A model generated the notes under the pieces. The model worked only from the letters and a program-made list of their open reading frames with translations. It was not told the origin of the DNA and searched no databases. The translations under genes and the position numbers were made by a program. From positions 62,001-126,000 of IMG/VR virus record IMGVR_UViG_3300028608_000006: a stretch of 64,000 nucleotides of DNA. One strand, 5' to 3'. Position 1 is the stretch's first letter. The number at the start of each line of letters is the position of its first letter. Of the stretch, positions 50,266-63,321 are shown one piece after another.

Positions 50266-50302
50266 ACTGTTCTCCCATTAAAAGAATTGGATTTACACCT
50301 AA

Positions 50303-50319
50303 GTAATGTAGGTTTGAGT
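50303..50319 (-). promoter_or_regulatory. phiKZ-type early promoter
   Basis: Minus strand ACTCAAACCTACATTAC. Confidence 0.75.
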
Positions 50320-52997: not shown

Positions 52998-54245
52998 TTA
53001 GTGCTTGAAGCCCAGCATTTGAGCCATGGATGCATTCGGCGTTACGGCCGGCACAGACATGGTTGGAGCAGGCAGAGCAGCTGGGAGGCCGTCTGCGTTC
53101 GAGTTCAGCTTGCCAGCGATTGCGGTGTGAGCCATACGACCCAGGCCGGAACCCAGTGCACCAGCAGCCAGACCCAGAGTACCAGCGGCGGTGTAACGAC
53201 CGAACTCGCTACCGATGTGCTCGTCGAGCATGTCAGCGGCGAAGAAGGAACCGGCGATCGCTGCAACTGCACCGATACCCGAACCGATGCTCAGGCTACC
53301 GCTGTGACCGGTTTCCAGAGCTGCGCCCAGCAGAGCACCGCCAGCTGCAATCCAGCCAGAACGGATGCCTTCGTCACGCTCACCACGCAGGGAGAAACGC
53401 GAACGTGCTTCGACCGACTGACGCGCCGGTTTGAAACCTTCAGCGAACTTGATGAAGGCGGTCAGGGTTTCAGGGGTCTTGCTAACGAACGCGTAGAACT
53501 GTTCGTCGTTGCTCAGCTTGTCATTGGCAACAGCCTGAGCCTGAGGTTGCAGTTCCAGGTTGGCAGTCAGGAAAGCGTTGTACAGCTCGTTACGCTTGGC
53601 TTCGGTGTCGTAACCGATGGCCACTACTGCGGCCAGGTGCAGTTGGAACGGAGTTGGTTGGGCGGCAGTGTTCATGGTGTCTTCCTTAGCGGCAGTAGTG
53701 GTGGTGGAGTTGGTGGCGGTAGTGGTAGCGGTGTCTTGCTTGATTTCTTGACCCAGTGGCATTGCTTGTTGCTCCAGCGAAGTTGGTTGAGTGTCGGCGG
53801 CTTGCTCGAGTTCTACAGACTCGTTGACAGCCGGTGCAGCTTGTTCGGTTACTTGGGCGGCGGCAGGATCCACCCAGTTCTCTTTGACATTGTTGACATA
53901 GGTCTCGGCTGTTTGTTCAGCCAGTTCCAGTACACCAGTACCATGCAATTCATCAACCGGGATCAAGGTACCTTGGATCACGGGTGCATCAGAAGCAGGA
54001 TCGTTAGCCAGAGCCGGATCGGCTTTGCGAACCTGGTTCATGCTGAAGTCTGTTTCCAGCGCTTCGTTAACACGTTTCAGGAAAGCCTGACGTTGTTGCT
54101 TCTCCAGAAGCTTCTCGTCAAACATCACTGCACGGAGTACAGCTTGCAGCCGGCGTGGATTACCGCCGTTTGTTCTGATGGTCTTCAGAGCCTCGATAGT
54201 GGCTTCGAGGTTTGCTTCGTAGTCAGGAACGGAAATCGAATTCAT
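52998..54245 (-). CDS. Monocistronic early protein with an acidic linker and a C-terminal glycine-zipper membrane region
   Basis: AAGGAG RBS; its own promoter and terminator; GGALLGA, GSGIGA, GLAAGALGSG GxxxG helices. Confidence 0.8.
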   Translation of the reverse strand: MNSISVPDYEANLEATIEALKTIRTNGGNPRRLQAVLRAVMFDEKLLEKQQRQAFLKRVNEALETDFSMNQVRKADPALANDPASDAPVIQGTLIPVDELHGTGVLELAEQTAETYVNNVKENWVDPAAAQVTEQAAPAVNESVELEQAADTQPTSLEQQAMPLGQEIKQDTATTTATNSTTTTAAKEDTMNTAAQPTPFQLHLAAVVAIGYDTEAKRNELYNAFLTANLELQPQAQAVANDKLSNDEQFYAFVSKTPETLTAFIKFAEGFKPARQSVEARSRFSLRGERDEGIRSGWIAAGGALLGAALETGHSGSLSIGSGIGAVAAIAGSFFAADMLDEHIGSEFGRYTAAGTLGLAAGALGSGLGRMAHTAIAGKLNSNADGLPAALPAPTMSVPAVTPNASMAQMLGFKH

Positions 54246-54413: not shown

Positions 54414-54845
54414 TTACTTACCGAGGCTGTACGCTTCGTTGGTAAAGGTCAACTTACGACCTGCCCAATCAGACAACACTTGATTGCACGCGAGGATGTC
54501 GTATTGGTTAAAGTCGTAGGTCAAACTCATGTGCGGGATGTACCCATTATAAGGAGTTTGATAACCACAGGCTTTTAACCGCAAGTGTTCCTCTTGCAGA
54601 TCCTTACTGGTCAAGCGAAAGATCAAACCGTCACCCAATACTTCGATAGCCACAACATGCGCTTCGAAGATACGGGTAGGGTCCAGCTTGGCCAGAGGTT
54701 CTTTGACATCACGCTCATCATAGATCAACGTGCTGTGGAAGTCGTGTTTCGGGGATGGAGCGATCCCAGCGCCACTCAGGAGAGTAATCAGCTCTGCTTC
54801 GAAGTCACTGGTCAGATCAACCGAGATGTAGCTGTAATCGGCCAT
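54414..54845 (-). CDS. acb1: Acb1/T4 gp57B-like 2H phosphodiesterase (anti-CBASS candidate)
   Basis: FHSTLIY and YIPHMSLTY 2H motifs, with spacing and context matching T4 57B as recalled (HSTICYS / YTPHITLSY); GAGG RBS before ATG 54845. Confidence 0.75.
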   Translation of the reverse strand: MADYSYISVDLTSDFEAELITLLSGAGIAPSPKHDFHSTLIYDERDVKEPLAKLDPTRIFEAHVVAIEVLGDGLIFRLTSKDLQEEHLRLKACGYQTPYNGYIPHMSLTYDFNQYDILACNQVLSDWAGRKLTFTNEAYSLGK

Positions 54846-54852
54846 GGCTGCC

Positions 54853-55572
54853 TCAGGAAGGATTAGGGGTGTCCAATACAATCCCTTGGCGGTTGTCGAT
54901 GATGTCCAAACAACGGAACACAGCAAAGACGCCTTGGTGTTCGGTCGACAGACGGTTCGCTTCTTCGAATGCCAGCGCCTTGGTCTGGTGACGGAACGGT
55001 ACATTGTGGAAATTCACCGCACCAGTCGGACCTACCTTGGAGATCACGTAGCGTCCCAAGGTCTTCGCGTACTTCGGCTTATAGCTGTTGGTGCCGGCGA
55101 TGGTCAGTTTGTTGTGGTACATCTGGAAACCTTCCCAGCGCGCATTCACCCACTGCATGACGTACTTATCCCGCGAGTCACGGTCCAGCACCTTTGGATC
55201 AAACGAGCCTTCTTCAAACAGCAGGTTCTCAAACTCCTCCCGCAGCGAACATTCCTTACGATCGGGACGTGCGGCTACAGGAGGCATCCCCTGACCCTGT
55301 TGCAACTCACGGGTGGTGCGGCGGGTCAGGGGAATGGCCACGACGTAAGGATCCGTGTCGTTAGCCGGGGTGAAGACCATTACCTGAGCATCTTCTTTTA
55401 CGTTTGGACCAATGCGTTCGTGCAGGACTTCTACCGCTTCTAGCAGGGCGGCTTCAACGTTAGGTTGCCCCAACTCTACGGTGCGCTTGTTTACCCATGC
55501 TTGATCAATTGCGCGCAGCGAGAGTGGTTCGGTGGACAAGAAATCCACCGGAGTCAGTTCTTGAACAGTCAT
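54853..55572 (-). CDS. Hypothetical protein
   Basis: 239 aa; C-terminal RHQTKALAFEEANRL...FAVF. Confidence 0.8.
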   Translation of the reverse strand: MTVQELTPVDFLSTEPLSLRAIDQAWVNKRTVELGQPNVEAALLEAVEVLHERIGPNVKEDAQVMVFTPANDTDPYVVAIPLTRRTTRELQQGQGMPPVAARPDRKECSLREEFENLLFEEGSFDPKVLDRDSRDKYVMQWVNARWEGFQMYHNKLTIAGTNSYKPKYAKTLGRYVISKVGPTGAVNFHNVPFRHQTKALAFEEANRLSTEHQGVFAVFRCLDIIDNRQGIVLDTPNPS

Positions 55573-55592: not shown

Positions 55593-56060
55593 TTATTCGT
55601 GGCTACCAGGCACATCGAAGTTTGGCAGTCCTGGAAGATCACCGTCCAGAATCTCGGAAACCCAGCGCCCGCCAGCCATTTCGATCGCGCGCCAATCAGC
55701 AGTACCGCCGATTTGTTTGGCGTATTCGTTCAGCAGACGAGGATGGTAGTTGTGGTCGCCCATGAGGCAATGGCCGAGACGATCAGCGATTCTGGAAAGG
55801 TCATCGTGATCAGCACCTTCTACCCGACCATCCGGGTGCAGGACTTGGACCCCGTACCACTTGCAATAGTTTTCCATCGTCACAATGGGTTTGCCGAAAG
55901 TAGACGGCGACTGGCACAGCAGTGGAATACCACGTTGGCTTACGTAGACCTTTGTCTTCGGTTGCCCCGGAACCGAGACCCACTGGATGATGTGTGGGTC
56001 ACTCTCTTTATTTCGCCCCGGAACTTCTGTGGGTGCTTCTGGTTGAATTTCGTTCGCCAT
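55593..56060 (-). CDS. Hypothetical protein
   Basis: AGGGGAG RBS. Confidence 0.75.
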   Translation of the reverse strand: MANEIQPEAPTEVPGRNKESDPHIIQWVSVPGQPKTKVYVSQRGIPLLCQSPSTFGKPIVTMENYCKWYGVQVLHPDGRVEGADHDDLSRIADRLGHCLMGDHNYHPRLLNEYAKQIGGTADWRAIEMAGGRWVSEILDGDLPGLPNFDVPGSHE

Positions 56061-56338
56061 CTTTGTTTCTCCCCTGAAGAAGGTTGTTTAGGTCCAAATA
56101 TCTTGTCGTGGAATTTCATCGAAGCCACCATACCGAACGCAGCCCCACAACCCGCACTTATCCCAATGGTCCAATCTCCCTTAACTACTAGGGTAATGGC
56201 GGCTACGTCAAATGCCGCCATTAAGAACGATGTGAAAAACACAGAGCGGGTGTGGTTACCAATCACGTTCTTGTACTGGAACCCTTTTAGAAATACCGCG
56301 CAGAACGAAGAGGCAAGGCTGAGTCCGTATAGCAGCAT
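55940..56338 (-). CDS. Membrane protein (about three TMs)
   Basis: Hydrophobic N-terminal 85 aa; TGATG coupling to rnhA; 3' end overlaps the next gene by 121 nt. Confidence 0.65.
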   Translation of the reverse strand: MLLYGLSLASSFCAVFLKGFQYKNVIGNHTRSVFFTSFLMAAFDVAAITLVVKGDWTIGISAGCGAAFGMVASMKFHDKIFGPKQPSSGEKQRWRTKFNQKHPQKFRGEIKRVTHTSSSGSRFRGNRRQRST

Positions 56339-56823
56339 CAGCTTAGTCCACTGTATTCGGTGTCATGGGTGGTAGGAGCAGCTGCCGCGTCTTTGGCAAT
56401 CTGGTCGGCCAGTTCGTTATCAGGGATACCGGAGTGAGCCTTGACCTTGAAGAACTTAACCTTGTTCGTCCTGAGCAACTCGTTCAGGATAATCCACAGG
56501 TCTTTGTTCTTGACCATATTGCCATCACGTGTTAGCCAATCGTTGCGGTACCAATTGCGGACCCACTTAGTAGATCCGTCAATCGTGTACTGTGAGTCGG
56601 TATAGATGTTGATCTTTGCATTCGGGCCGAATTCTTCCAATGTGGCGATCACGGCCATGATCTCCATACGGTTGTTGGTGGTTAAGAAATAACCCTTGGC
56701 GAGTGTGACCATCTGGTCTCCGCATCGCACCACAGCACCGTAACCGCCCGGGCCGGGATTGCCGAGTGCACTCCCGTCCGTATAGGCTTCGTAAACAATT
56801 GGAGCCTTTTTAGCTTTTGCCAT
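56338..56823 (-). CDS. rnhA: Ribonuclease HI
   Basis: YTDGSALGNPGPGGYG, TTNNRMEIMA, YTDSQY, KNKDLW, VKAHSG...NELADQIA. Confidence 0.97.
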   Translation of the reverse strand: MAKAKKAPIVYEAYTDGSALGNPGPGGYGAVVRCGDQMVTLAKGYFLTTNNRMEIMAVIATLEEFGPNAKINIYTDSQYTIDGSTKWVRNWYRNDWLTRDGNMVKNKDLWIILNELLRTNKVKFFKVKAHSGIPDNELADQIAKDAAAAPTTHDTEYSGLS

Positions 56824-56826
56824 TAC

Positions 56827-57765
56827 CTACACCGTGTTTTGTTCCTGTTTAGCTTCCATCATTTCAATCACCTTGACCCTCGACTTCACAGAGTCAATGA
56901 GATGTTCGACAGCCGCTTCGATCATGGGAACTTCCCAGAACTTGGTTTGTTTGAGCAGACGTTCAGAAAGCTCTGGATCCGCTACGTCAAGCTCCCAATG
57001 AGAGCCACTAATGGCGACCATATAAGAACCCTTTGCAGCACGATAAAAGTTGAACCCGCCGTACTCGTTAAAGTCAATGCGGAAGTAGCCGAATGGGTTG
57101 TCGAAATTCAACGCCCCCGCGGTGTCGATTTCAACCCCACCCAGTGTGCAGCGGTTGATGCGGACAGGTCCTTCTGCTTCGATTTTACCGCCCTTCAGTT
57201 TAGTGCTGGACAGAGTGACGTCATCTTCGCCGCACAACCAAACCCCTTTAAGCTCGCTGGCAATGACTGTGACCAAACCCTTTGCTTTAATGACGGTGCC
57301 TTGGAGGGTTGAGGACTCGGTAACCATGATCCCCGACGGCGTTTCCGAATTCTTCACGGTGGAGTTCTGGATCAGCGCGTCCTTTACCCCGTACGTTGCG
57401 TGCGCGTCTTCGAACTCGCATTCGATCGTGCAGTTATCAAGGGTGCAGTTGTTGGTGGCGACATACTCCAAGACAACATACCCATGGAACACGTCATTGT
57501 TGCTGAAGGCGTTCTCGAGGGTGACAACCGCGAACGCTTCCAGAGGGGTCTTGGTGAACCCCGCCAAGTTCTGGTACAACGACGGATCGAAGTCCACCCG
57601 GGAGAAAGGATCCAAGTAGAAATGGATCTTGTCCTTGTCGTTGAGTTTGACCTCATAAAGACACCACGCACCGGGAGTGTCCTCCGTGATCATGGAAATC
57701 CCTGCTTTATCAGGAACTCGTTTTGTGCCGTTGATAAACAGACCTGTTTCTTCTACTTCACTCAT
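56827..57765 (-). CDS. Beta-solenoid repeat protein, tandem paralog 1 of 4
   Basis: ETGLFING, FYLDPFSRV, S/N/T/C-rich short repeats, C-terminal LIDSVKSRVKV. Confidence 0.85.
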   Translation of the reverse strand: MSEVEETGLFINGTKRVPDKAGISMITEDTPGAWCLYEVKLNDKDKIHFYLDPFSRVDFDPSLYQNLAGFTKTPLEAFAVVTLENAFSNNDVFHGYVVLEYVATNNCTLDNCTIECEFEDAHATYGVKDALIQNSTVKNSETPSGIMVTESSTLQGTVIKAKGLVTVIASELKGVWLCGEDDVTLSSTKLKGGKIEAEGPVRINRCTLGGVEIDTAGALNFDNPFGYFRIDFNEYGGFNFYRAAKGSYMVAISGSHWELDVADPELSERLLKQTKFWEVPMIEAAVEHLIDSVKSRVKVIEMMEAKQEQNTV

Positions 57766-57788
57766 ATTGACTCACCTCGGTGTGTTGA

Positions 57789-58796
57789 TTAGCAGACAGC
57801 GCTTAGACGCAGGTACTCTTGGTGACGATACCGCTCTATCGCCGTCATTACCTTGGTCCTAGACTCAATGCTGTCGTAGATGTATTGCAGGCAGCTTTCT
57901 TCGCTACCCTGCCTACGGTCCCTGAGAACTTGTTGAAGCACGTCCTCAACATTGGGATTATCCACAAAGACAGAAAAACGATCACCCCGAATATCCGGAG
58001 CAATAGCCCACTTGCAACCACCGGTTTGGTAGACGTAGAACTTAACTTTCGGTAGCACCACTTCTAGGAAGTACATAGGTCCGGGTACATGGATGGATTC
58101 CCCAGTGATGCGAACCTTTGGCCAGTTAACACGCTGGATCGTTAACAACCCATGCATGTTAACATGGGTATTCCATGCGTAAACGTCCTCCAGCAGAATC
58201 TGTCCGTCTGTATTGAACTTGGAGAATTGCATATCACATTGATCAACCAGAACCGTGTTGTCAGTCCTAGAGATTACAGTGACATCCTGCAAGGTGCTCC
58301 CCATCACCACAGCATCTTTCGAGAATCGTCCGTCGATAACTTCTGACTCGAGCAGTTCTAGTCGGATGTAGATGTTAAACATCTTTTCATCTACATCCCT
58401 CAGAATAAGGATCGAGGCAGAAAGATGGGACTCTGCGATTATGACGTTAACGAGCGTGCATTCGCCCTCAAACGTACACCGCTGGCTAACGGTGTCTACA
58501 AAAACAGCCCGACAGTATTCGTTGTCGACTACATCCTTATCCAGATCTTTCTGGAGCGTCAGGAAACGTTCACTGTCGATTTCAACACAAGACTCAGGAC
58601 ACAAGTAGAATTCGAGATTGAACTTCCCCACAGGAATGCTGTAGTAGTCCAGAACAATATCTGGATCCACTACGCCCAATTCAAAGGCGGCGGGTTTCCC
58701 CGCGCCTACGGCAACCTGCTTCACGCCGTCGAGAAACAGCCCAGGGGGGCACTTCTCTTTAGCAGGTCTTAATCCAAGCTCTTCCAGCAAACTCAT
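57789..58796 (-). CDS. Beta-solenoid repeat protein, tandem paralog 2 of 4
   Basis: GLFLDG, FYLCPESCV, IYDSIESRTKV. Confidence 0.85.
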   Translation of the reverse strand: MSLLEELGLRPAKEKCPPGLFLDGVKQVAVGAGKPAAFELGVVDPDIVLDYYSIPVGKFNLEFYLCPESCVEIDSERFLTLQKDLDKDVVDNEYCRAVFVDTVSQRCTFEGECTLVNVIIAESHLSASILILRDVDEKMFNIYIRLELLESEVIDGRFSKDAVVMGSTLQDVTVISRTDNTVLVDQCDMQFSKFNTDGQILLEDVYAWNTHVNMHGLLTIQRVNWPKVRITGESIHVPGPMYFLEVVLPKVKFYVYQTGGCKWAIAPDIRGDRFSVFVDNPNVEDVLQQVLRDRRQGSEESCLQYIYDSIESRTKVMTAIERYRHQEYLRLSAVC

Positions 58797-59731
58797 ATTG
58801 GATCTCCTAAAGTTTTCTCAAACTCAGCCCACAACGCTTGAATGAGATTACGACGTGAACGGATCGAGTCCATCACGTACTTGACTGTATCGTCGGGTAG
58901 CAGCTGTTCGCAGTCCACCAAGAGTTCTTTCAGTTTCCCTCGGAACTCTGGATCGTCTACGTTCATATCGAAGCCACCGCCTTGACGGGTGATGGCAAAC
59001 GCCTCACTGCCGGTTTGGTAGCAGTACAACGTCAGGCTCGGGAAGTCGATGCTGAAGAAGTACAGACGATTCGGAATGTGGCAATCGTCAATCTTCATGT
59101 ACATCTCGTTCATACGGCTGTCACAGATGCGAACGAAGTTAATCGCGTGCACACTGGTCTCGTTGAACTTACAACCATTGAGGTACAACGTGCCTCTCGC
59201 CGAGAACGAAGAGTTCTTCAGCGTGGAGCCTTCAATCCACACGCCAGCAGCTTCTGTGATGACCGTGGAGTTGATTACCGATGAATTGAGGATCGTACTA
59301 CCGTCCGAGATCGTAGCGTTCTCCAAACGCGACCCAGAGACACTGAGGTTAACCAGCGGGTGCAATTCGGAGATCTTCAATGAGGATCTGGAGATGTCCG
59401 AGTTACTGACCTTGCAGTTATTGGTGACACTGTTGTACAGCGTGCAGTTTCCAGTGAATGCATCCCGGTAGCTGCTGCTGTTCCTCACAATCACCCAAGC
59501 GTGGTTATCATCGTCATTCTCTTCATCAATATCGAGGTCGAGATAGTGCGACGAATCAATCTTCACCACGGACATGTGATCAAGGAAGAAGTGAACAGTG
59601 AGGATCCCCACCACTACCCGGTACTGACTGAACTCGCCGTCGCCAGCGTCTTCGTCAATCGACGGATTAGTGTTAGTACGGACGGGGTCCAACTTGTGAC
59701 CATCCAAGAACAAACCGGTTTCATGCTTCAT
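58793..59731 (-). CDS. Beta-solenoid repeat protein, tandem paralog 3 of 4
   Basis: ETGLFLDG, FFLDHMSVV, VMDSIRSRRNL. Confidence 0.85.
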   Translation of the reverse strand: MKHETGLFLDGHKLDPVRTNTNPSIDEDAGDGEFSQYRVVVGILTVHFFLDHMSVVKIDSSHYLDLDIDEENDDDNHAWVIVRNSSSYRDAFTGNCTLYNSVTNNCKVSNSDISRSSLKISELHPLVNLSVSGSRLENATISDGSTILNSSVINSTVITEAAGVWIEGSTLKNSSFSARGTLYLNGCKFNETSVHAINFVRICDSRMNEMYMKIDDCHIPNRLYFFSIDFPSLTLYCYQTGSEAFAITRQGGGFDMNVDDPEFRGKLKELLVDCEQLLPDDTVKYVMDSIRSRRNLIQALWAEFEKTLGDPI

Positions 59732-59791
59732 CTTTTAGCTCCTAAGCAAAACATAATCCACCGGAGTTTCCCCCGGTGGATTAGCGTTCAG

Positions 59792-61291
59792 TTAGACTGC
59801 GTAGATGTCGTCCCAAGGCCTTGTGCGGTCACCAACTTCGCGGACAAGCTGTTTAGCTTCATCCAACAGGCGAACGACTTTCAAACGAGACGTGATCGAG
59901 TCAGTCAAGTAACTGGCAACGCTACGGGAAAGGGAAGTAGGTTGAGTGTAGAAACCTTCCGGGTCCAAAGACAACTGGCAGGCTACAACTTTTTCGATTT
60001 CTTCCTTCGGTGCATCCAGGCGTAGACGCTCCATGTTGTGCAGGTTCACGCCGAGATCGAAGTCACGACGGGTGGCACGAACCATGTACATTTTGTGCTG
60101 CGGGGTATCAATCTCCAGGTAGCAGAACTTGTTGGGGATGTAGATCGAGTTGGCCTTGATGTGAGCGCCAGTAAAGCGGGAGTACTTCAACAACAGTTCG
60201 CCTTCGCTGTTCACGCCGCACTTGGTCAGGTGGTTGCCCTTCAGTGTAACTCGAGTACCACGGATGTGGCAGTCGAAGATCTGGCAAGTGCCGACCTGAA
60301 CGTAGCCAGCGCTGCTGATCTGGCTGTCGTGAACCTGCGAATCACGGTACTCGCCCTTACTGATCGAGGAGTTGAAAACCGAGGTACGCTTGAACAGACA
60401 TTCCCGTACATTGAAGCGTTCTTTCACTTCTTTGCTAACCGGTGTCGGCTCGTCGCTCATGTGACCGAAACCACGCGGGTAGTTCGGATCATGTTCCTTG
60501 GTGCACGCCAACACGGCGTTGTTCAACAGGTTGTAAGCCGACTCGGTATTGATGAGGGTCGACTCACCCAGCACGATGTCGTCATTACTGGACGAGTTGA
60601 TCAGCACCAGCACGCCACGGTTGGGAACGTTCTGACGACGGTGGTAGTCCAAACGAGCATCACCGCCACCCACACTGACAGTGGAGTTGCTGTCCAGCAG
60701 GTAATACGCTTCCACATCACCAGCACGCAAACGATACAGAGAGAACACCTTGTCCGTGTACAGCTGGGAGATCGGGTGCGGCAGGTAGAACGGAGTTTCC
60801 AGGTGCTGGCTGCGGATACGGTTGTAGTCGACTTTCAACCCGGTTTCAATCGGATCTTGCAACACGCCTTCGTACATGAAGGTACCCTGAGCCTGAACCC
60901 GCATGACCGCATCAGCTACGGCTTCGGAGATCAGGCTATCCGGATCACGACCAGCCGCTTTCAACACACGCTCGGCGTTCTTGATCTGACGATCAGTTGG
61001 TGCTTCTTCGACCACCACATGTTCGAACACAGGAGAGAAGCCCAGCCCCTTGGACGGCTTGTGGTAATCGACGATCGGTGGTTGAGGCTCATCGACAATC
61101 AGCGCGAGATTGCGCTTCTTCTTTTCAGCGACGATTTCTGGCAGGGTCACGTAGCTGGTATCGCCCGCTGCCTTCTTCTGAGCATCGAGATCTTTGACAA
61201 TCTCAACGGTTTCATTCACAAGTTCCCCGACAATACCCTCGGGAGACTGAGTATCTTCCTTGATCTTTACAACTTTGTCCGTCTTACTCAT
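59792..61291 (-). CDS. Beta-solenoid repeat protein with an N-terminal extension, tandem paralog 4 of 4
   Basis: ETGLKVD, YLLDSNSTV, LTDSITSRLKV. Confidence 0.85.
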   Translation of the reverse strand: MSKTDKVVKIKEDTQSPEGIVGELVNETVEIVKDLDAQKKAAGDTSYVTLPEIVAEKKKRNLALIVDEPQPPIVDYHKPSKGLGFSPVFEHVVVEEAPTDRQIKNAERVLKAAGRDPDSLISEAVADAVMRVQAQGTFMYEGVLQDPIETGLKVDYNRIRSQHLETPFYLPHPISQLYTDKVFSLYRLRAGDVEAYYLLDSNSTVSVGGGDARLDYHRRQNVPNRGVLVLINSSSNDDIVLGESTLINTESAYNLLNNAVLACTKEHDPNYPRGFGHMSDEPTPVSKEVKERFNVRECLFKRTSVFNSSISKGEYRDSQVHDSQISSAGYVQVGTCQIFDCHIRGTRVTLKGNHLTKCGVNSEGELLLKYSRFTGAHIKANSIYIPNKFCYLEIDTPQHKMYMVRATRRDFDLGVNLHNMERLRLDAPKEEIEKVVACQLSLDPEGFYTQPTSLSRSVASYLTDSITSRLKVVRLLDEAKQLVREVGDRTRPWDDIYAV

Positions 61292-63252
61292 AGTGGGGCT
61301 CCAGCTTTGATCTGTTGAATGAGTGCGTCGATGCTCGTGGCAGCGGTTGCGTTAATCCTAGGAATATCTTGTTCAGTAGCTTTTAGTATCTTGCTCTGAC
61401 CAGGCTTCTCCCCAATGAGGAGGTAGTTACAATCCTTGGTGAGTTTATCCACCAGCTCAATACCATGATCCCCGAAGTAGCTTTCCAGTTCTTCTCGGGT
61501 TTGACCGATCGTACCTGTGATGCACACCTTCAGTTCAGTGATAGGGCCTTCCGGTTCAGTCCGCACAACGATGTTCTGCAACATGCGTTCGGCGTTTTCT
61601 TTGAACTCTTCACTTTCAAAGCTCAAAGCAATCGGAATCGACAACCCCGCAGAGAACCCAGGAATCTTGATCAGTTCGTCGGCATTACCCAACCACTGAA
61701 GTAAGTTCACATTCCCCGGCCATGCAGCAGCCAGCTTCTTGGCACGTGTCAGATCAACGCCCGGCAGACCCAGCGCCTTAATGACACGGGACAGTGGTTG
61801 ACCCTTACGCACTTCCTGAATGCGGTTGTAGATCTTCTCACCCACTACGCGTTCGTTTAGAAGAAGGATGTCCACCGGTGCCTTGATGTAACCCTGTTCA
61901 ACCAGCTCAGCGATGGTCACAGGACCCAGATCGTCGATATCCAGCGTGCGTTTGTGCGCAAGGTTCACGCAACGTAGCACAAGCTGTGCAGGACAGTCTG
62001 TGACGTTCGTACAGATGAGATCGGCGCTCTGCTTGGTGATACGCTTCTCCAGCGGCATCATGCAGCTAGGGCACTCCTCAGGTGCTTTGAAGAGCTCGGC
62101 TTCACCATGCTCGATCACACGATTCAGACGAGGAATCACGTCACCGTTACGGGTAACACCGATGACAGAACCTTTACGCAGCTCCAAAGCAAGGAACTGT
62201 TTATAGTTGTCCAGCAGCGTACGAGAACAGATCACCCCGCCGATACGAGTAGGGGTATAGATCCCCACCGGCACCACACGACCAGTGCGAGTTGTGTTCC
62301 ACTCGATATCGGTCAGACTGGTTGCCACTTCCACATCTGGATACTTGTACGCCAGCGCCCAGTTCGGGTACTTGTTGGTGACCCCCAGTTGATCTTGCAA
62401 GTCAAAGTTATCGACCTTGATCACAATACCGTCAGCAGGCCAGTCCTTGCTGTTGATGTTCTCCCGGATAGCTTCTAGAGACGCCACAGGTGCGCAGTGG
62501 AAGCCGAGCAGGGTCAGGTGGTTACGCAGTTGACTGTACTTCTGGAAACCCAGTCGACTGCTGCACGAGTAAGCGCCAAATCGCAGAAGACCTTTCACCG
62601 CCGGGTTCTGGTTCTCCGGCAGAGCACGCACCCAACCACTGACTGCGTTACGAGGGGTAGCAGCTTGTTTAACCGCCGTCTCGTTGTACAGTTCAAACTC
62701 GTGGTTGGCAATGTGACCTTCACCTCGGATAGAGATGGTGCCTGGCACAGGCACGTTGTGCAGGTCGGTTAACACCGTTGGGATATTCAGGCCAAACAAT
62801 GGCAGAGCATGAGTCACATCCTCACCCACCAGACCCGAACCCCGGGTAACCATGGAAACCAGTGGTCCATCCACGTAAGTCAGTTCCAGCGCCAGCCCGT
62901 CCAACTTAAGTTCATAGAAGAACTCAGTGTCTTCCGGAAACCGTGCGAGGAACTTATCAACCGCTTCTTGGTTCAGCCCTTTCTTCAGGCTGAGCATTGG
63001 CGAGTCAAAGGTCACCGCTTTCAAGCCTTCATTAGTAGGCTCGTGGATCGGCACAGGTTTGCGGGCAGTCTCGAACAACTCGGCAACTTCCGGGTGTTCT
63101 TCGGCCAACTCTTCGAAACGTTCTACCAGTTTGTCGTAGGCGTAATCGGGGATCTCCGAGGTGTCCTTGTTGAAATACAGATCCGCGTGGTACATGATGT
63201 CACGATTGAGATCGTTCATCTCGGCGAAGATTGTTTTGTGTTTTGCTTTCAT
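61288..63252 (-). CDS. ligA: NAD+-dependent DNA ligase
   Basis: N-terminal YF...EIPDYAYD, MLSL, ELKLDG (adenylation Lys), TRGSGLVGEDVT, PRNAVSG, DGIVIK, C4 Zn finger, HhH, C-terminal BRCT (CITG...GEKPGQSKILKA). Start set at MKAKHK. Confidence 0.97.
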   Translation of the reverse strand: MKAKHKTIFAEMNDLNRDIMYHADLYFNKDTSEIPDYAYDKLVERFEELAEEHPEVAELFETARKPVPIHEPTNEGLKAVTFDSPMLSLKKGLNQEAVDKFLARFPEDTEFFYELKLDGLALELTYVDGPLVSMVTRGSGLVGEDVTHALPLFGLNIPTVLTDLHNVPVPGTISIRGEGHIANHEFELYNETAVKQAATPRNAVSGWVRALPENQNPAVKGLLRFGAYSCSSRLGFQKYSQLRNHLTLLGFHCAPVASLEAIRENINSKDWPADGIVIKVDNFDLQDQLGVTNKYPNWALAYKYPDVEVATSLTDIEWNTTRTGRVVPVGIYTPTRIGGVICSRTLLDNYKQFLALELRKGSVIGVTRNGDVIPRLNRVIEHGEAELFKAPEECPSCMMPLEKRITKQSADLICTNVTDCPAQLVLRCVNLAHKRTLDIDDLGPVTIAELVEQGYIKAPVDILLLNERVVGEKIYNRIQEVRKGQPLSRVIKALGLPGVDLTRAKKLAAAWPGNVNLLQWLGNADELIKIPGFSAGLSIPIALSFESEEFKENAERMLQNIVVRTEPEGPITELKVCITGTIGQTREELESYFGDHGIELVDKLTKDCNYLLIGEKPGQSKILKATEQDIPRINATAATSIDALIQQIKAGAPL

Positions 63253-63321
63253 CGAAAAAACCTGCAAGCATAAATAAGGGTATATAAGGAGCCTGAGGAT
63301 AGTCCCCAAGCTCCTTATACT

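What the first reader, a model, noticed from the sequence alone, without database searches (positions are those of the whole stretch)
56827..61291. Four tandem beta-solenoid paralogs (4.5 kb) wedged between RNase HI and DNA ligase
Seen: four ORFs share (E)TGL(F/K), a (F/Y)(Y/F)L(D/C/L)..S.V strand, a central run of ~5-residue S/N/T/C-hydrophobic repeats, a (F/L/M)Y.Y/V strand pair and a C-terminal helix ..DS(I/V).SR..(V/L). They are otherwise strongly diverged and largely acidic. The ligase-proximal copy has ~150 extra N-terminal residues, and its start overlaps the ligA stop. Established: right-handed pentapeptide solenoids such as Qnr and MfpA can mimic DNA. Inference: a diversified array of DNA-mimic or decoy proteins protecting replication intermediates or titrating different host defence enzymes, or filament-forming scaffolds for the replication compartment.
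Basis: partly seen in the sequence, partly recalled or inferred. Interest (0 to 1): 0.7.

Follow-up and report, generated by a model that had tools for sequence, protein, structure and literature searches.

The report
Swappable beta-helix gene array, jumbo phage

Summary
Four minus-strand genes (A 56827-57765, B 57789-58796, C 58793-59731, D 59792-61291) are true paralogs (pairwise E 1e-4 to 1e-28, 19-26% identity). They lie between RNase HI and NAD-ligase, and D's start overlaps the ligase stop. The genome is a 232-kb soil jumbo phage collinear with Pseudomonas phage EL.

The long form (D) is the ancestral gene. It occurs once, in the same ligase-X-RNase H slot, in EL, RisingSun, Miami and FishSpeaker. 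The short forms are an old derived clade present in 0 to 3 copies. Against a close strain, identity is 95-100% in D, 84-96% in C and 57-59% in the third gene, with dN/dS of 0.02-0.07.

Best reading (confidence 0.3): D is a non-enzymatic partner of the ligase/RNase H module, and the short copies are exchangeable binding modules. The Qnr-like DNA-mimic reading is weakly supported.

The parts
61288..63309 (-). NAD-dependent DNA ligase (LigA), upstream neighbour. Its stop overlaps the start of copy D.
   Evidence: Pfam DNA_ligase_aden 1e-37, OB, ZBD, BRCT. 46% identical to phage EL gp122.
63282..63320 (-). Stem-loop (18 pairs) just upstream of ligA. Together with the hairpin after D it brackets a ligA+D two-gene unit.
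   Evidence: Terminator-like scan.
59792..61291 (-). Copy D, the long form (499 aa). It has a disordered Lys/Glu-rich N-terminus (about residues 1-89), conserved helices carrying PTDRQIKNAERVLKAAGRD (about 96-135), a beta-helix body (about 137-386), a beta/alpha C-terminal cap carrying NKF..L..D.P and DSI.SR, and an acidic-aromatic tip DDIYAV.
   Evidence: Model m58d0617bf698, pLDDT 78.5. Conserved motifs. Orthologues occupy the same slot in EL gp123 (5e-72), RisingSun gp111 (1e-47), Miami gp069 (5e-27) and FishSpeaker (4e-9).
59754..59783 (-). Conserved 13-bp-stem hairpin followed by a U-rich tract, between D and C. It is a probable terminator or attenuator and coincides with a recombination breakpoint.
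   Evidence: z -6.2; kept with compensatory changes in L008, L010, L017, L036. Identity between strains steps down here.
58793..59731 (-). Copy C, short form (312 aa), subclade C.
   Evidence: Family HMM 6e-81. Orthologues in L010, L008 and L018. dN/dS 0.06-0.07 against strain alleles.
57789..58796 (-). Copy B, short form (335 aa), subclade B. It overlaps the end of C by 4 nt and ends with the peptide EYLRLSAVC, which is shared with other subclades.
   Evidence: In a near-identical strain this slot holds a different allele (42% identity).
56827..57765 (-). Copy A, short form (312 aa), subclade A. It is absent from the closest large relatives L010 and L008.
   Evidence: Weak sub-threshold Pfam Beta_helix/NosD match (E 1e-3).
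56338..56823 (-). RNase HI, downstream neighbour (3-nt gap after A).
   Evidence: Pfam RNase_H 5.8e-41. 59% identical to EL gp124.

Best explanation
The four genes belong to one jumbo-phage-specific family of non-enzymatic beta-helix proteins.

Each protein is a three-sided helix, probably left-handed, with coils of about 17 residues. A small N-terminal beta cap closes one end. A beta/alpha C-terminal cap closes the other, and its helix carries an invariant Ser-Arg.

The long copy D is the ancestral, conserved gene. It is made together with the NAD-ligase from a hairpin-bracketed two-gene unit with overlapping stop and start codons. It most likely works as a scaffold or adaptor for the ligase/RNase H nick-processing module, using its disordered N-terminal arm and acidic-aromatic C-terminal tip as tethers.

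The short copies C, B and A descend from an old duplicate that lost the arm and the tip. They persist as distinct subfamilies, vary in number (0-3), and are exchanged between closely related strains by recombination. They therefore most likely use the same rigid body to bind different, changeable partners, either host factors or phage factors, as adaptors or decoys.

Shown: paralogy, family distribution, synteny, the predicted fold, the mosaic pattern between strains and purifying selection. Inferred: every statement about binding partners and function.
For: Paralogy is shown.

Fold:
- The AF2 model of D has pLDDT 78.5 and pTM 0.71.
- Model strands recur every 16-17 residues, and hydrophobic autocorrelation peaks at lags 5, 10, 16-18, 23 and 28 but not at 20.
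- No known family matches in Pfam, PHROGs, NCBIfam or PADLOC, and no His is among the conserved columns.

D is the ancestral, conserved gene:
- It occurs as a single copy in the same slot in EL, RisingSun, Miami and FishSpeaker.
- The long and short forms separate in the tree with 96% SH-aLRT support.

Coupling to the ligase:
- The stop/start overlap is seen in the window, EL, L008, L010, L013, L038 and FishSpeaker.
- Hairpins flank ligA+D.

Exchangeable short copies:
- Copy number runs from 1 to 4.
- Against L010, ligase and RNase H are 91% identical, but D is 67%, C 71% and B 38%, and A is absent.
- Against strain L036, nucleotide identity is 95-100% in D, 84-96% in C and 57-59% in the third gene. 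That third gene is 70% identical to L010's allele.
- dN/dS is 0.02-0.07.
Against: - There is no direct evidence for any partner.
- The homotrimer prediction gave no verdict.
- The fold rests on one AF2 model, and solenoid pLDDT is only 66-86. A low-confidence ESM model of C resembled right-handed helices instead.
- The sequence profile resembles pentapeptide proteins, not hexapeptide ones.
- Fast divergence could simply reflect the low constraint on solenoid surfaces. Strain differences in C are evenly spread and conservative, with no hypervariable patch.
- In RisingSun and Miami small genes separate the ligase from the long copy, so the coupling is not universal.
- The family was not found in phiKZ, 201phi2-1 or Goslar. 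It is therefore not needed by all nucleus-forming phages.
Confidence: 0.3

Rival explanations
1. One reading: the proteins are Qnr/MfpA-like DNA mimics. In this reading, acidic solenoids imitate duplex DNA and so titrate gyrase, nucleases or defence enzymes.
For: - The family profile matches pentapeptide-repeat proteins in the PDB (MfpA 1.7e-7, QnrB1 2.5e-5).
- The short copies have pI 4.3-4.8.
- The array is variable and an Acb1-like anti-CBASS gene lies close by.
- Phage RecBCD and restriction inhibitors often sit in replication or recombination modules (general knowledge).
Against: - The model superposes on EfsQnr only at 11.9 A, but on left-handed helices at about 3 A.
- Coils are about 17 residues, with no lag-20 signal.
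- Pfam Pentapeptide is below threshold.
- The solenoid's net charge is about zero, and the acidity lies mainly in the caps.
- Long forms have a median pI of 6.4.
Confidence: 0.12
2. The four paralogs assemble into one hetero-oligomer. Left-handed beta-helix proteins usually trimerise, and non-enzymatic ones such as dynactin p25/p27, eIF2B gamma/epsilon and complex-I gamma-CA subunits form mixed complexes. In this reading the array encodes the subunits of a single machine.
For: - The predicted fold is a left-handed beta-helix, and a long C-terminal helix follows the helix body, as in LpxD.
- The subfamilies are old and retained side by side.
- The genes are tightly packed, with a 4-nt overlap between C and B.
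Against: - Copy number varies from 1 to 4, so no fixed stoichiometry exists.
- One slot can be swapped for an allele only 42% identical while D stays 99.6% identical.
- The homotrimer prediction scored 0.01, which gives no verdict and is not evidence either way.
Confidence: 0.15
3. The proteins are virion, ejected or receptor-binding components. Tandem diverged beta-helix paralogs with cassette exchange are typical of tailspike sets such as CBA120 TSP1-4 (general knowledge).
For: - The proteins have a beta-helix, exchange is mosaic, and copy number varies.
- Baseplate genes lie a few kb upstream in EL and relatives.
Against: - The genes sit inside the SbcC-ligase-RNase H replication/repair block and are co-oriented with it.
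- The proteins are small (312 aa).
- The N- and C-terminal caps are conserved, rather than a conserved anchor being joined to a variable tip.
- RisingSun gp111 is not named anywhere in the text of the paper reporting the lysate mass spectrometry; this is weak evidence.
- Right-handed tailspike helices fit the model only at about 11-12 A.
Confidence: 0.07
4. The proteins are hexapeptide-type acyltransferases, or another enzyme built on a left-handed beta-helix.
For: The best structural matches are GlmU, LpxA, LpxD and sugar N-acetyltransferases. Protein-language-model features point to YdcK/Hexapep clusters, with a score of 0.80, which is a lead only.
Against: - There is no Pfam Hexapep match.
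- No His or other catalytic residue is conserved in the helix. The invariant residues are a Ser in the N cap and Ser-Arg in the C-terminal helix.
- There is no lag-6 periodicity.
Confidence: 0.05

Closest known systems
Pentapeptide-repeat DNA mimics (Qnr, MfpA, AlbG, EfsQnr)
   Same: Both are beta-solenoids built from roughly 5-residue units with an S/T/N/C-then-hydrophobic pattern. A weak profile match exists (MfpA E 1.7e-7). The short copies are acidic.
   Different: Qnr-type helices are right-handed and four-sided with 20-residue coils. Here the coils are about 17 residues, and the model is three-sided and left-handed. This family has N- and C-terminal cap domains, its solenoid is about neutral, and it does not reach the Pfam threshold.
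Left-handed beta-helix (LbH) domains of GlmU, LpxA, LpxD and the uncharacterised YdcK (PDB 2f9c; Pfam PF18836, a 17-position repeat)
   Different: No Hexapep or YdcK HMM match was found, no catalytic residues are conserved, and the periodicity is 5 rather than 6. Trimerisation is not shown.
Non-enzymatic LbH scaffolds (dynactin p25/p27, eIF2B gamma/epsilon, GMPPA, complex-I gamma-CA-like subunits, CcmM) and the spruce-budworm antifreeze protein CfAFP
   Different: No sequence relationship is demonstrable. The setting is a phage replication module, the genes form a tandem diversified array, and the cap domains differ.
Phage EL gp123, RisingSun gp111, Klebsiella phage Miami gp069 and the FishSpeaker protein between ligase and RNase HI (all annotated 'hypothetical protein')
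   Same: These are true family members, orthologues of copy D, in the same ligase-X-RNase H position.
   Different: They are single-copy. The window's lineage adds one to three short paralogs. None has been studied, as far as the searched literature shows.

Membership tests
Pentapeptide-repeat proteins (Pfam PF00805; Qnr/MfpA fold) | Match to the Pfam Pentapeptide models above the gathering score | tested here: not met
   C matches only Pentapeptide_4 at E 0.21 (12 bits against 38 needed). One of 108 family members matches Pentapeptide at E 9.5e-4.
Pentapeptide-repeat proteins (Pfam PF00805; Qnr/MfpA fold) | Unbroken 5-residue periodicity giving 20-residue, four-sided coils | tested here: not met
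   Autocorrelation over 123 members is positive at lags 5 and 10, weak at 15 and zero at 20, with peaks at 16-18, 23 and 28. Model strands recur every 16-17 residues.
Pentapeptide-repeat proteins (Pfam PF00805; Qnr/MfpA fold) | Right-handed quadrilateral beta-helix | tested here: not met
   [not shown]
Pentapeptide-repeat proteins (Pfam PF00805; Qnr/MfpA fold) | Sequence similarity to solved pentapeptide proteins | tested here: inconclusive
   The profile against PDB sequences gives MfpA 1.7e-7 and QnrB1 2.5e-5, over 57-115 profile positions. Repeat composition can inflate such scores.
DNA-mimic proteins | Strongly and regularly negative surface on the rod | tested here: inconclusive
   Sequence-level only. 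Solenoid net charge is A -10, B -8, C +1, D +2, with a family mean of -1.3 per 100 residues.
Left-handed beta-helix superfamily (hexapeptide transferases) | Left-handed three-sided helix fold | tested here: met
   [not shown]
Left-handed beta-helix superfamily (hexapeptide transferases) | Hexapeptide motif [LIV]-[GAED]-x2-[STAV]-x (Pfam Hexapep) and 6-residue periodicity | tested here: not met
   No Hexapep match in any of 108 members. Autocorrelation at lag 6 is -0.004.
Left-handed beta-helix superfamily (hexapeptide transferases) | Conserved catalytic residue (usually His) and an acyl-CoA site at a trimer interface | tested here: not met
   The 30 most conserved columns hold no His. The invariant residues are S203, S468 and R469 in D numbering. 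The trimer prediction gave no verdict.
YdcK-type solenoid (Pfam PF18836) | 17-residue solenoid repeat recognised by the PF18836 model | tested here: inconclusive
   [not shown]
Bactofilin-type polymerising solenoids | Pfam Bactofilin match and open helix ends for head-to-tail polymerisation | tested here: not met
   No Pfam match. In the model both ends are covered by cap domains. The only hits are a weak BFVD match (E 0.29) and a low-confidence Atlas match.
Phage tailspike or tail-fibre sets | Presence in the virion and location in the structural module | tested here: inconclusive
   The genes lie in the SbcC-ligase-RNase H block. RisingSun gp111 is not named in the text of the paper reporting the lysate mass spectrometry. 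No EL virion proteome could be read.

The most novel reading that the evidence does not exclude
EL-like jumbo phages carry a previously undescribed class of modular protein. One rigid left-handed beta-helix chassis is tied to the ligase/RNase H module. Truncated copies of it are shuffled between strains as cassettes to neutralise or hijack different host factors. This would be a counter-defence or host-takeover toolkit that operates beside DNA-nick processing and is unrelated to any known anti-defence family.
Probability: 0.2. Interest if true: 0.75.

Novelty: new variant of a known kind. Interest (0 to 1): 0.5.

Why it matters
The long copy is a conserved but unnamed gene. It sits between DNA ligase and RNase H in a wide range of jumbo phages, including the culturable phages EL, RisingSun, Miami and FishSpeaker. 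No clamp or other lagging-strand accessory factors were noted for these phages in this work. A dedicated partner of the nick-sealing enzymes would fill part of that gap.

The short copies show a clear case of cassette exchange inside an otherwise conserved replication block. In phages that pattern usually marks genes that meet the host directly. Because EL and RisingSun can be grown, the function is directly testable.

The result also carries a caution: a five-residue repeat pattern read from sequence does not by itself identify a Qnr-type DNA mimic.

Tried and rejected
- Folding C from its single sequence gave pLDDT 40 and was unusable.
It was repeated without them.
- Foldseek against the PDB, AFDB clusters, Swiss-Prot and Atlas shapes found nothing significant. 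Only RisingSun gp111 and a Vibrio phage VP4B protein matched in BFVD.
- The homotrimer prediction of C (3 copies, own alignment) scored 0.01. The tool gave no verdict, so this is not evidence either way.
- megablast and tblastn of the array against cultured phages found only EL-type gp123, for D.
- The search for related loci with the broad alignment failed for lack of conserved stretches. With the long-form alignment it returned few loci.
- phiKZ chimallin did not match the genome, so nucleus formation is inferred only from collinearity with EL.
- The conserved N-terminal helix motif of D occurs nowhere else in this genome or in EL.
- The N-terminal extensions match no Pfam family.
- The EL promoter word does not occur inside the array.
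- Literature searches for EL gp123, RisingSun gp111 and beta-helix or pentapeptide proteins in jumbo phages found no functional study.
- Amino-acid differences between strain alleles of C show no hypervariable patch, so positive selection on a surface is not shown.

Full report
THE OBSERVATION

The window carries four consecutive minus-strand ORFs:
- A, 56827-57765, 312 aa
- B, 57789-58796, 335 aa
- C, 58793-59731, 312 aa
- D, 59792-61291, 499 aa

RNase HI lies downstream (56338-56823) and an NAD-dependent DNA ligase lies upstream (61288-63309). D's start codon overlaps the ligase stop by 4 nt, and C and B also overlap by 4 nt.

The four proteins are homologous well beyond chance. BLASTP gives E-values from 1e-28 (C-B) to 1e-4 (A-B) at 19-26% identity. 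A-C are acidic (pI 4.7-4.8); D is not (pI 6.06). The whole 231,788-bp virus genome contains only these four copies. Contigs from independent soil, rhizosphere and digester metagenomes carry the same array, so it is not an assembly artefact.

WHOSE GENOME

The ligase's nearest cultured relative is Pseudomonas phage EL, at 46% identity. An ORF-by-ORF comparison shows the genome is collinear with EL almost end to end, with protein identities of 25-70%. It is therefore an uncultured EL-like jumbo phage. phiKZ chimallin did not match it, so I did not confirm a phage nucleus directly.

THE FAMILY

A profile of the four copies found 115 cluster representatives among 1.84 billion proteins. They fall into two size classes: about 303-387 aa, and about 415-554 aa with an N-terminal extension. 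No Pfam, PHROGs, NCBIfam or PADLOC family matches above threshold.

The family occurs once in each of these cultured phages:
- EL gp123 (E 5e-72)
- RisingSun gp111 (E 1e-47)
- Klebsiella phage Miami gp069 (E 5e-27)
- Shewanella phage FishSpeaker (E 4e-9)

In every case it sits between the NAD-ligase and RNase H. It was not found in phiKZ, 201phi2-1 or Goslar.

In uncultured relatives the copy number varies:
- one long copy: L038 (65.9-kb contig). L016 also shows only one, but its contig is only 6.8 kb and what follows the gene was not examined.
- one long and one short: L013
- one long and two short: L008, L015, L010, L017
- two long: L039
- at least three short: L018
- one long and three short: the window

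A maximum-likelihood tree separates a short-form clade (51 rows, SH-aLRT 96) from the long forms. The window's A, B and C fall into three distinct subclades, each with orthologues in other phages. The paralogs are therefore old lineages, not recent duplicates. The long form is the ancestral and most widely kept gene.

THE FOLD

A single-sequence model of C was useless (pLDDT 40). An AlphaFold2 model of D built on a 106-sequence alignment reached pLDDT 78.5 and pTM 0.71. It shows:
- a disordered N-terminus (about residues 1-89)
- two helices (100-135)
- a long beta region (137-386) whose strands recur every 16-17 residues
- four further strands (391-424)
- two helices (429-440 and 453-486)

- LpxA: 3.0 A over 144 residues
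- a sugar N-acetyltransferase (7s3u): 2.4 A over 122 residues

Right-handed helices, and the pentapeptide protein EfsQnr, aligned only at 11-12 A rmsd.

The sequence agrees with this. Over 123 members, hydrophobic autocorrelation in the solenoid peaks at lags 5 and 10, then at 16-18, 23 and 28, with nothing at 20 or at 6. That pattern fits coils of about 17 residues built as 5+5+7. It fits neither the 20-residue pentapeptide coil nor the classical 6+6+6 hexapeptide coil. The Pfam YdcK solenoid repeat is also 17 positions long, although its HMM does not match this genome.

Three results point the other way:
- The family profile matches pentapeptide proteins in PDB sequence space (MfpA 1.7e-7, QnrB1 2.5e-5).
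- A low-confidence ESM model of C resembled right-handed helices.
- Solenoid pLDDT in the D model is only 66-86.

I take the three-sided, about-17-residue coil as well supported. I take left-handedness as probable but not proven.

No His is conserved. The invariant positions are a Ser in the N-terminal cap and Ser-Arg in the C-terminal helix, together with conserved Gly, Pro, Tyr and Asp. An acyltransferase is therefore unlikely.

CHARGE

The solenoid is nearly neutral: family mean -1.3 per 100 residues, C +1, D +2. The acidity of the short forms lies largely in the caps. Long forms have a median pI of 6.4. This weakens the DNA-mimic analogy. It is a sequence-level count, not a computed surface.

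GENE ORGANISATION

The ligase stop overlaps the long copy's start in the window, EL, L008, L010, L013, L038 and FishSpeaker. In RisingSun and Miami one or two small genes intervene.

A 13-bp-stem hairpin with a U-rich tail follows D (59754-59783). It is kept, with compensatory changes, in four relatives. Another stem-loop precedes ligA (63282-63320). Ligase and D therefore look like a two-gene unit. The wider block is conserved across relatives: SbcC-like ATPase, small genes, ligase, the family, RNase H, and an Acb1-like gene.

EVOLUTIONARY BEHAVIOUR

Against the 233-kb relative L010, ligase and RNase H are 91% identical and most neighbours are 83-99% identical. D is 67%, C is 71%, B is 38%, and A is absent.

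A contig from a near-identical strain (L036) shows a stepwise mosaic:
- 95-100% nucleotide identity through the ligase end and D (dS 0.07, dN/dS 0.02)
- 84-96% in C (dS 0.43, dN/dS 0.06)
- 57-59% in the third gene, whose product is 42% identical to the window's B but 70% identical to L010's allele

The breakpoints lie near the D/C hairpin and at the C/B junction. The short copies are thus exchanged as cassettes by recombination, while each allele remains under strong purifying selection. Amino-acid differences between C alleles are evenly spread and conservative. I therefore have no evidence of a positively selected surface.

INTERPRETATION

What is shown: this is an uncharacterised, jumbo-phage-specific family of capped beta-helix proteins. 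It has an ancestral long member tied to the ligase/RNase H block, and derived short members that vary in number and are swapped between strains.

What is inferred: the long form is a non-enzymatic scaffold or adaptor of the nick-processing module. The grounds are conserved synteny down to 32% ligase identity, translational coupling, a disordered arm and an acidic-aromatic C-terminal tip. The short forms, which lack the arm and the tip, would be exchangeable binding modules (adaptors or decoys) for variable partners. I give this 0.3.

Rivals:
- Qnr-like DNA mimicry: 0.12
- a hetero-oligomer of the paralogs: 0.15
- virion or receptor-binding proteins: 0.07
- an enzyme built on a left-handed beta-helix: 0.05

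The homotrimer prediction returned no verdict and counts for nothing. I found no published work on EL gp123, RisingSun gp111 or their relatives.

VERDICT

The more interesting facts are the conserved ligase-X-RNase H slot across many jumbo phages and the cassette exchange of the short copies. The function remains open, and it is testable in culturable phages such as EL.

Noticed in passing
window 54414-54866 (-) (the ORF extends to 55004): Acb1-like 2H phosphoesterase (anti-CBASS family PF23474, 49.3 bits against a cut-off of 27). The EL orthologue gp126 is annotated 'RNA ligase'. The gene is kept downstream of the array in all relatives examined.
   Followed up: partly
window 59754-59783 (-) and 63282-63320 (-): Two strong stem-loops bracket ligA plus copy D. 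The first is conserved, with compensatory base changes, in L008, L010, L017 and L036, and it coincides with a recombination breakpoint between strains.
   Followed up: partly
L036:1-2984 against window 58600-61500: Stepwise mosaic between near-identical strains: 95-100% nucleotide identity in D, 84-96% in C and 57-59% in the third gene. That third gene is closer to the allele of a different phage (L010).
   Followed up: yes
L039:1465-4286 (contig from the same metagenome as the window): A different phage in the same sample carries two long-form copies in tandem (482 and 439 aa) in front of RNase H. Long forms therefore also duplicate.
   Followed up: partly
C-termini of B (window 57789-57815) and of D (window 59792-59812): There are short conserved C-terminal peptides. 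EYLRLSAVC is shared by B and by members of other short subclades. Long forms end in DD(I/M)Y(A/S)V, and RisingSun gp111 ends in DHDDYLPF, which recalls the acidic-aromatic tip of bacterial SSB. These may be docking motifs.
   Followed up: no
window 50299-50315 (-) and about 9753 (-): Copies of the EL-type promoter word AAACCTACATTAyT. None lies inside the ligase-to-RNase H stretch.
   Followed up: partly
window 55593-56060 (-) and 55940-56338 (-): Two ORFs overlap by 121 nt, and both are 95-99% conserved with L010. The upstream ORF starts with three hydrophobic segments. The true start of the downstream gene may be internal.
   Followed up: no
window 52998-54245 (-): A 415-aa protein with Thr/Ala-rich low-complexity and Gly-rich hydrophobic stretches and no Pfam match. 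It is only 45-53% identical to its orthologues in L010 and L008, so it is another fast-diverging gene near the array.
   Followed up: no
[not shown]
   Followed up: no
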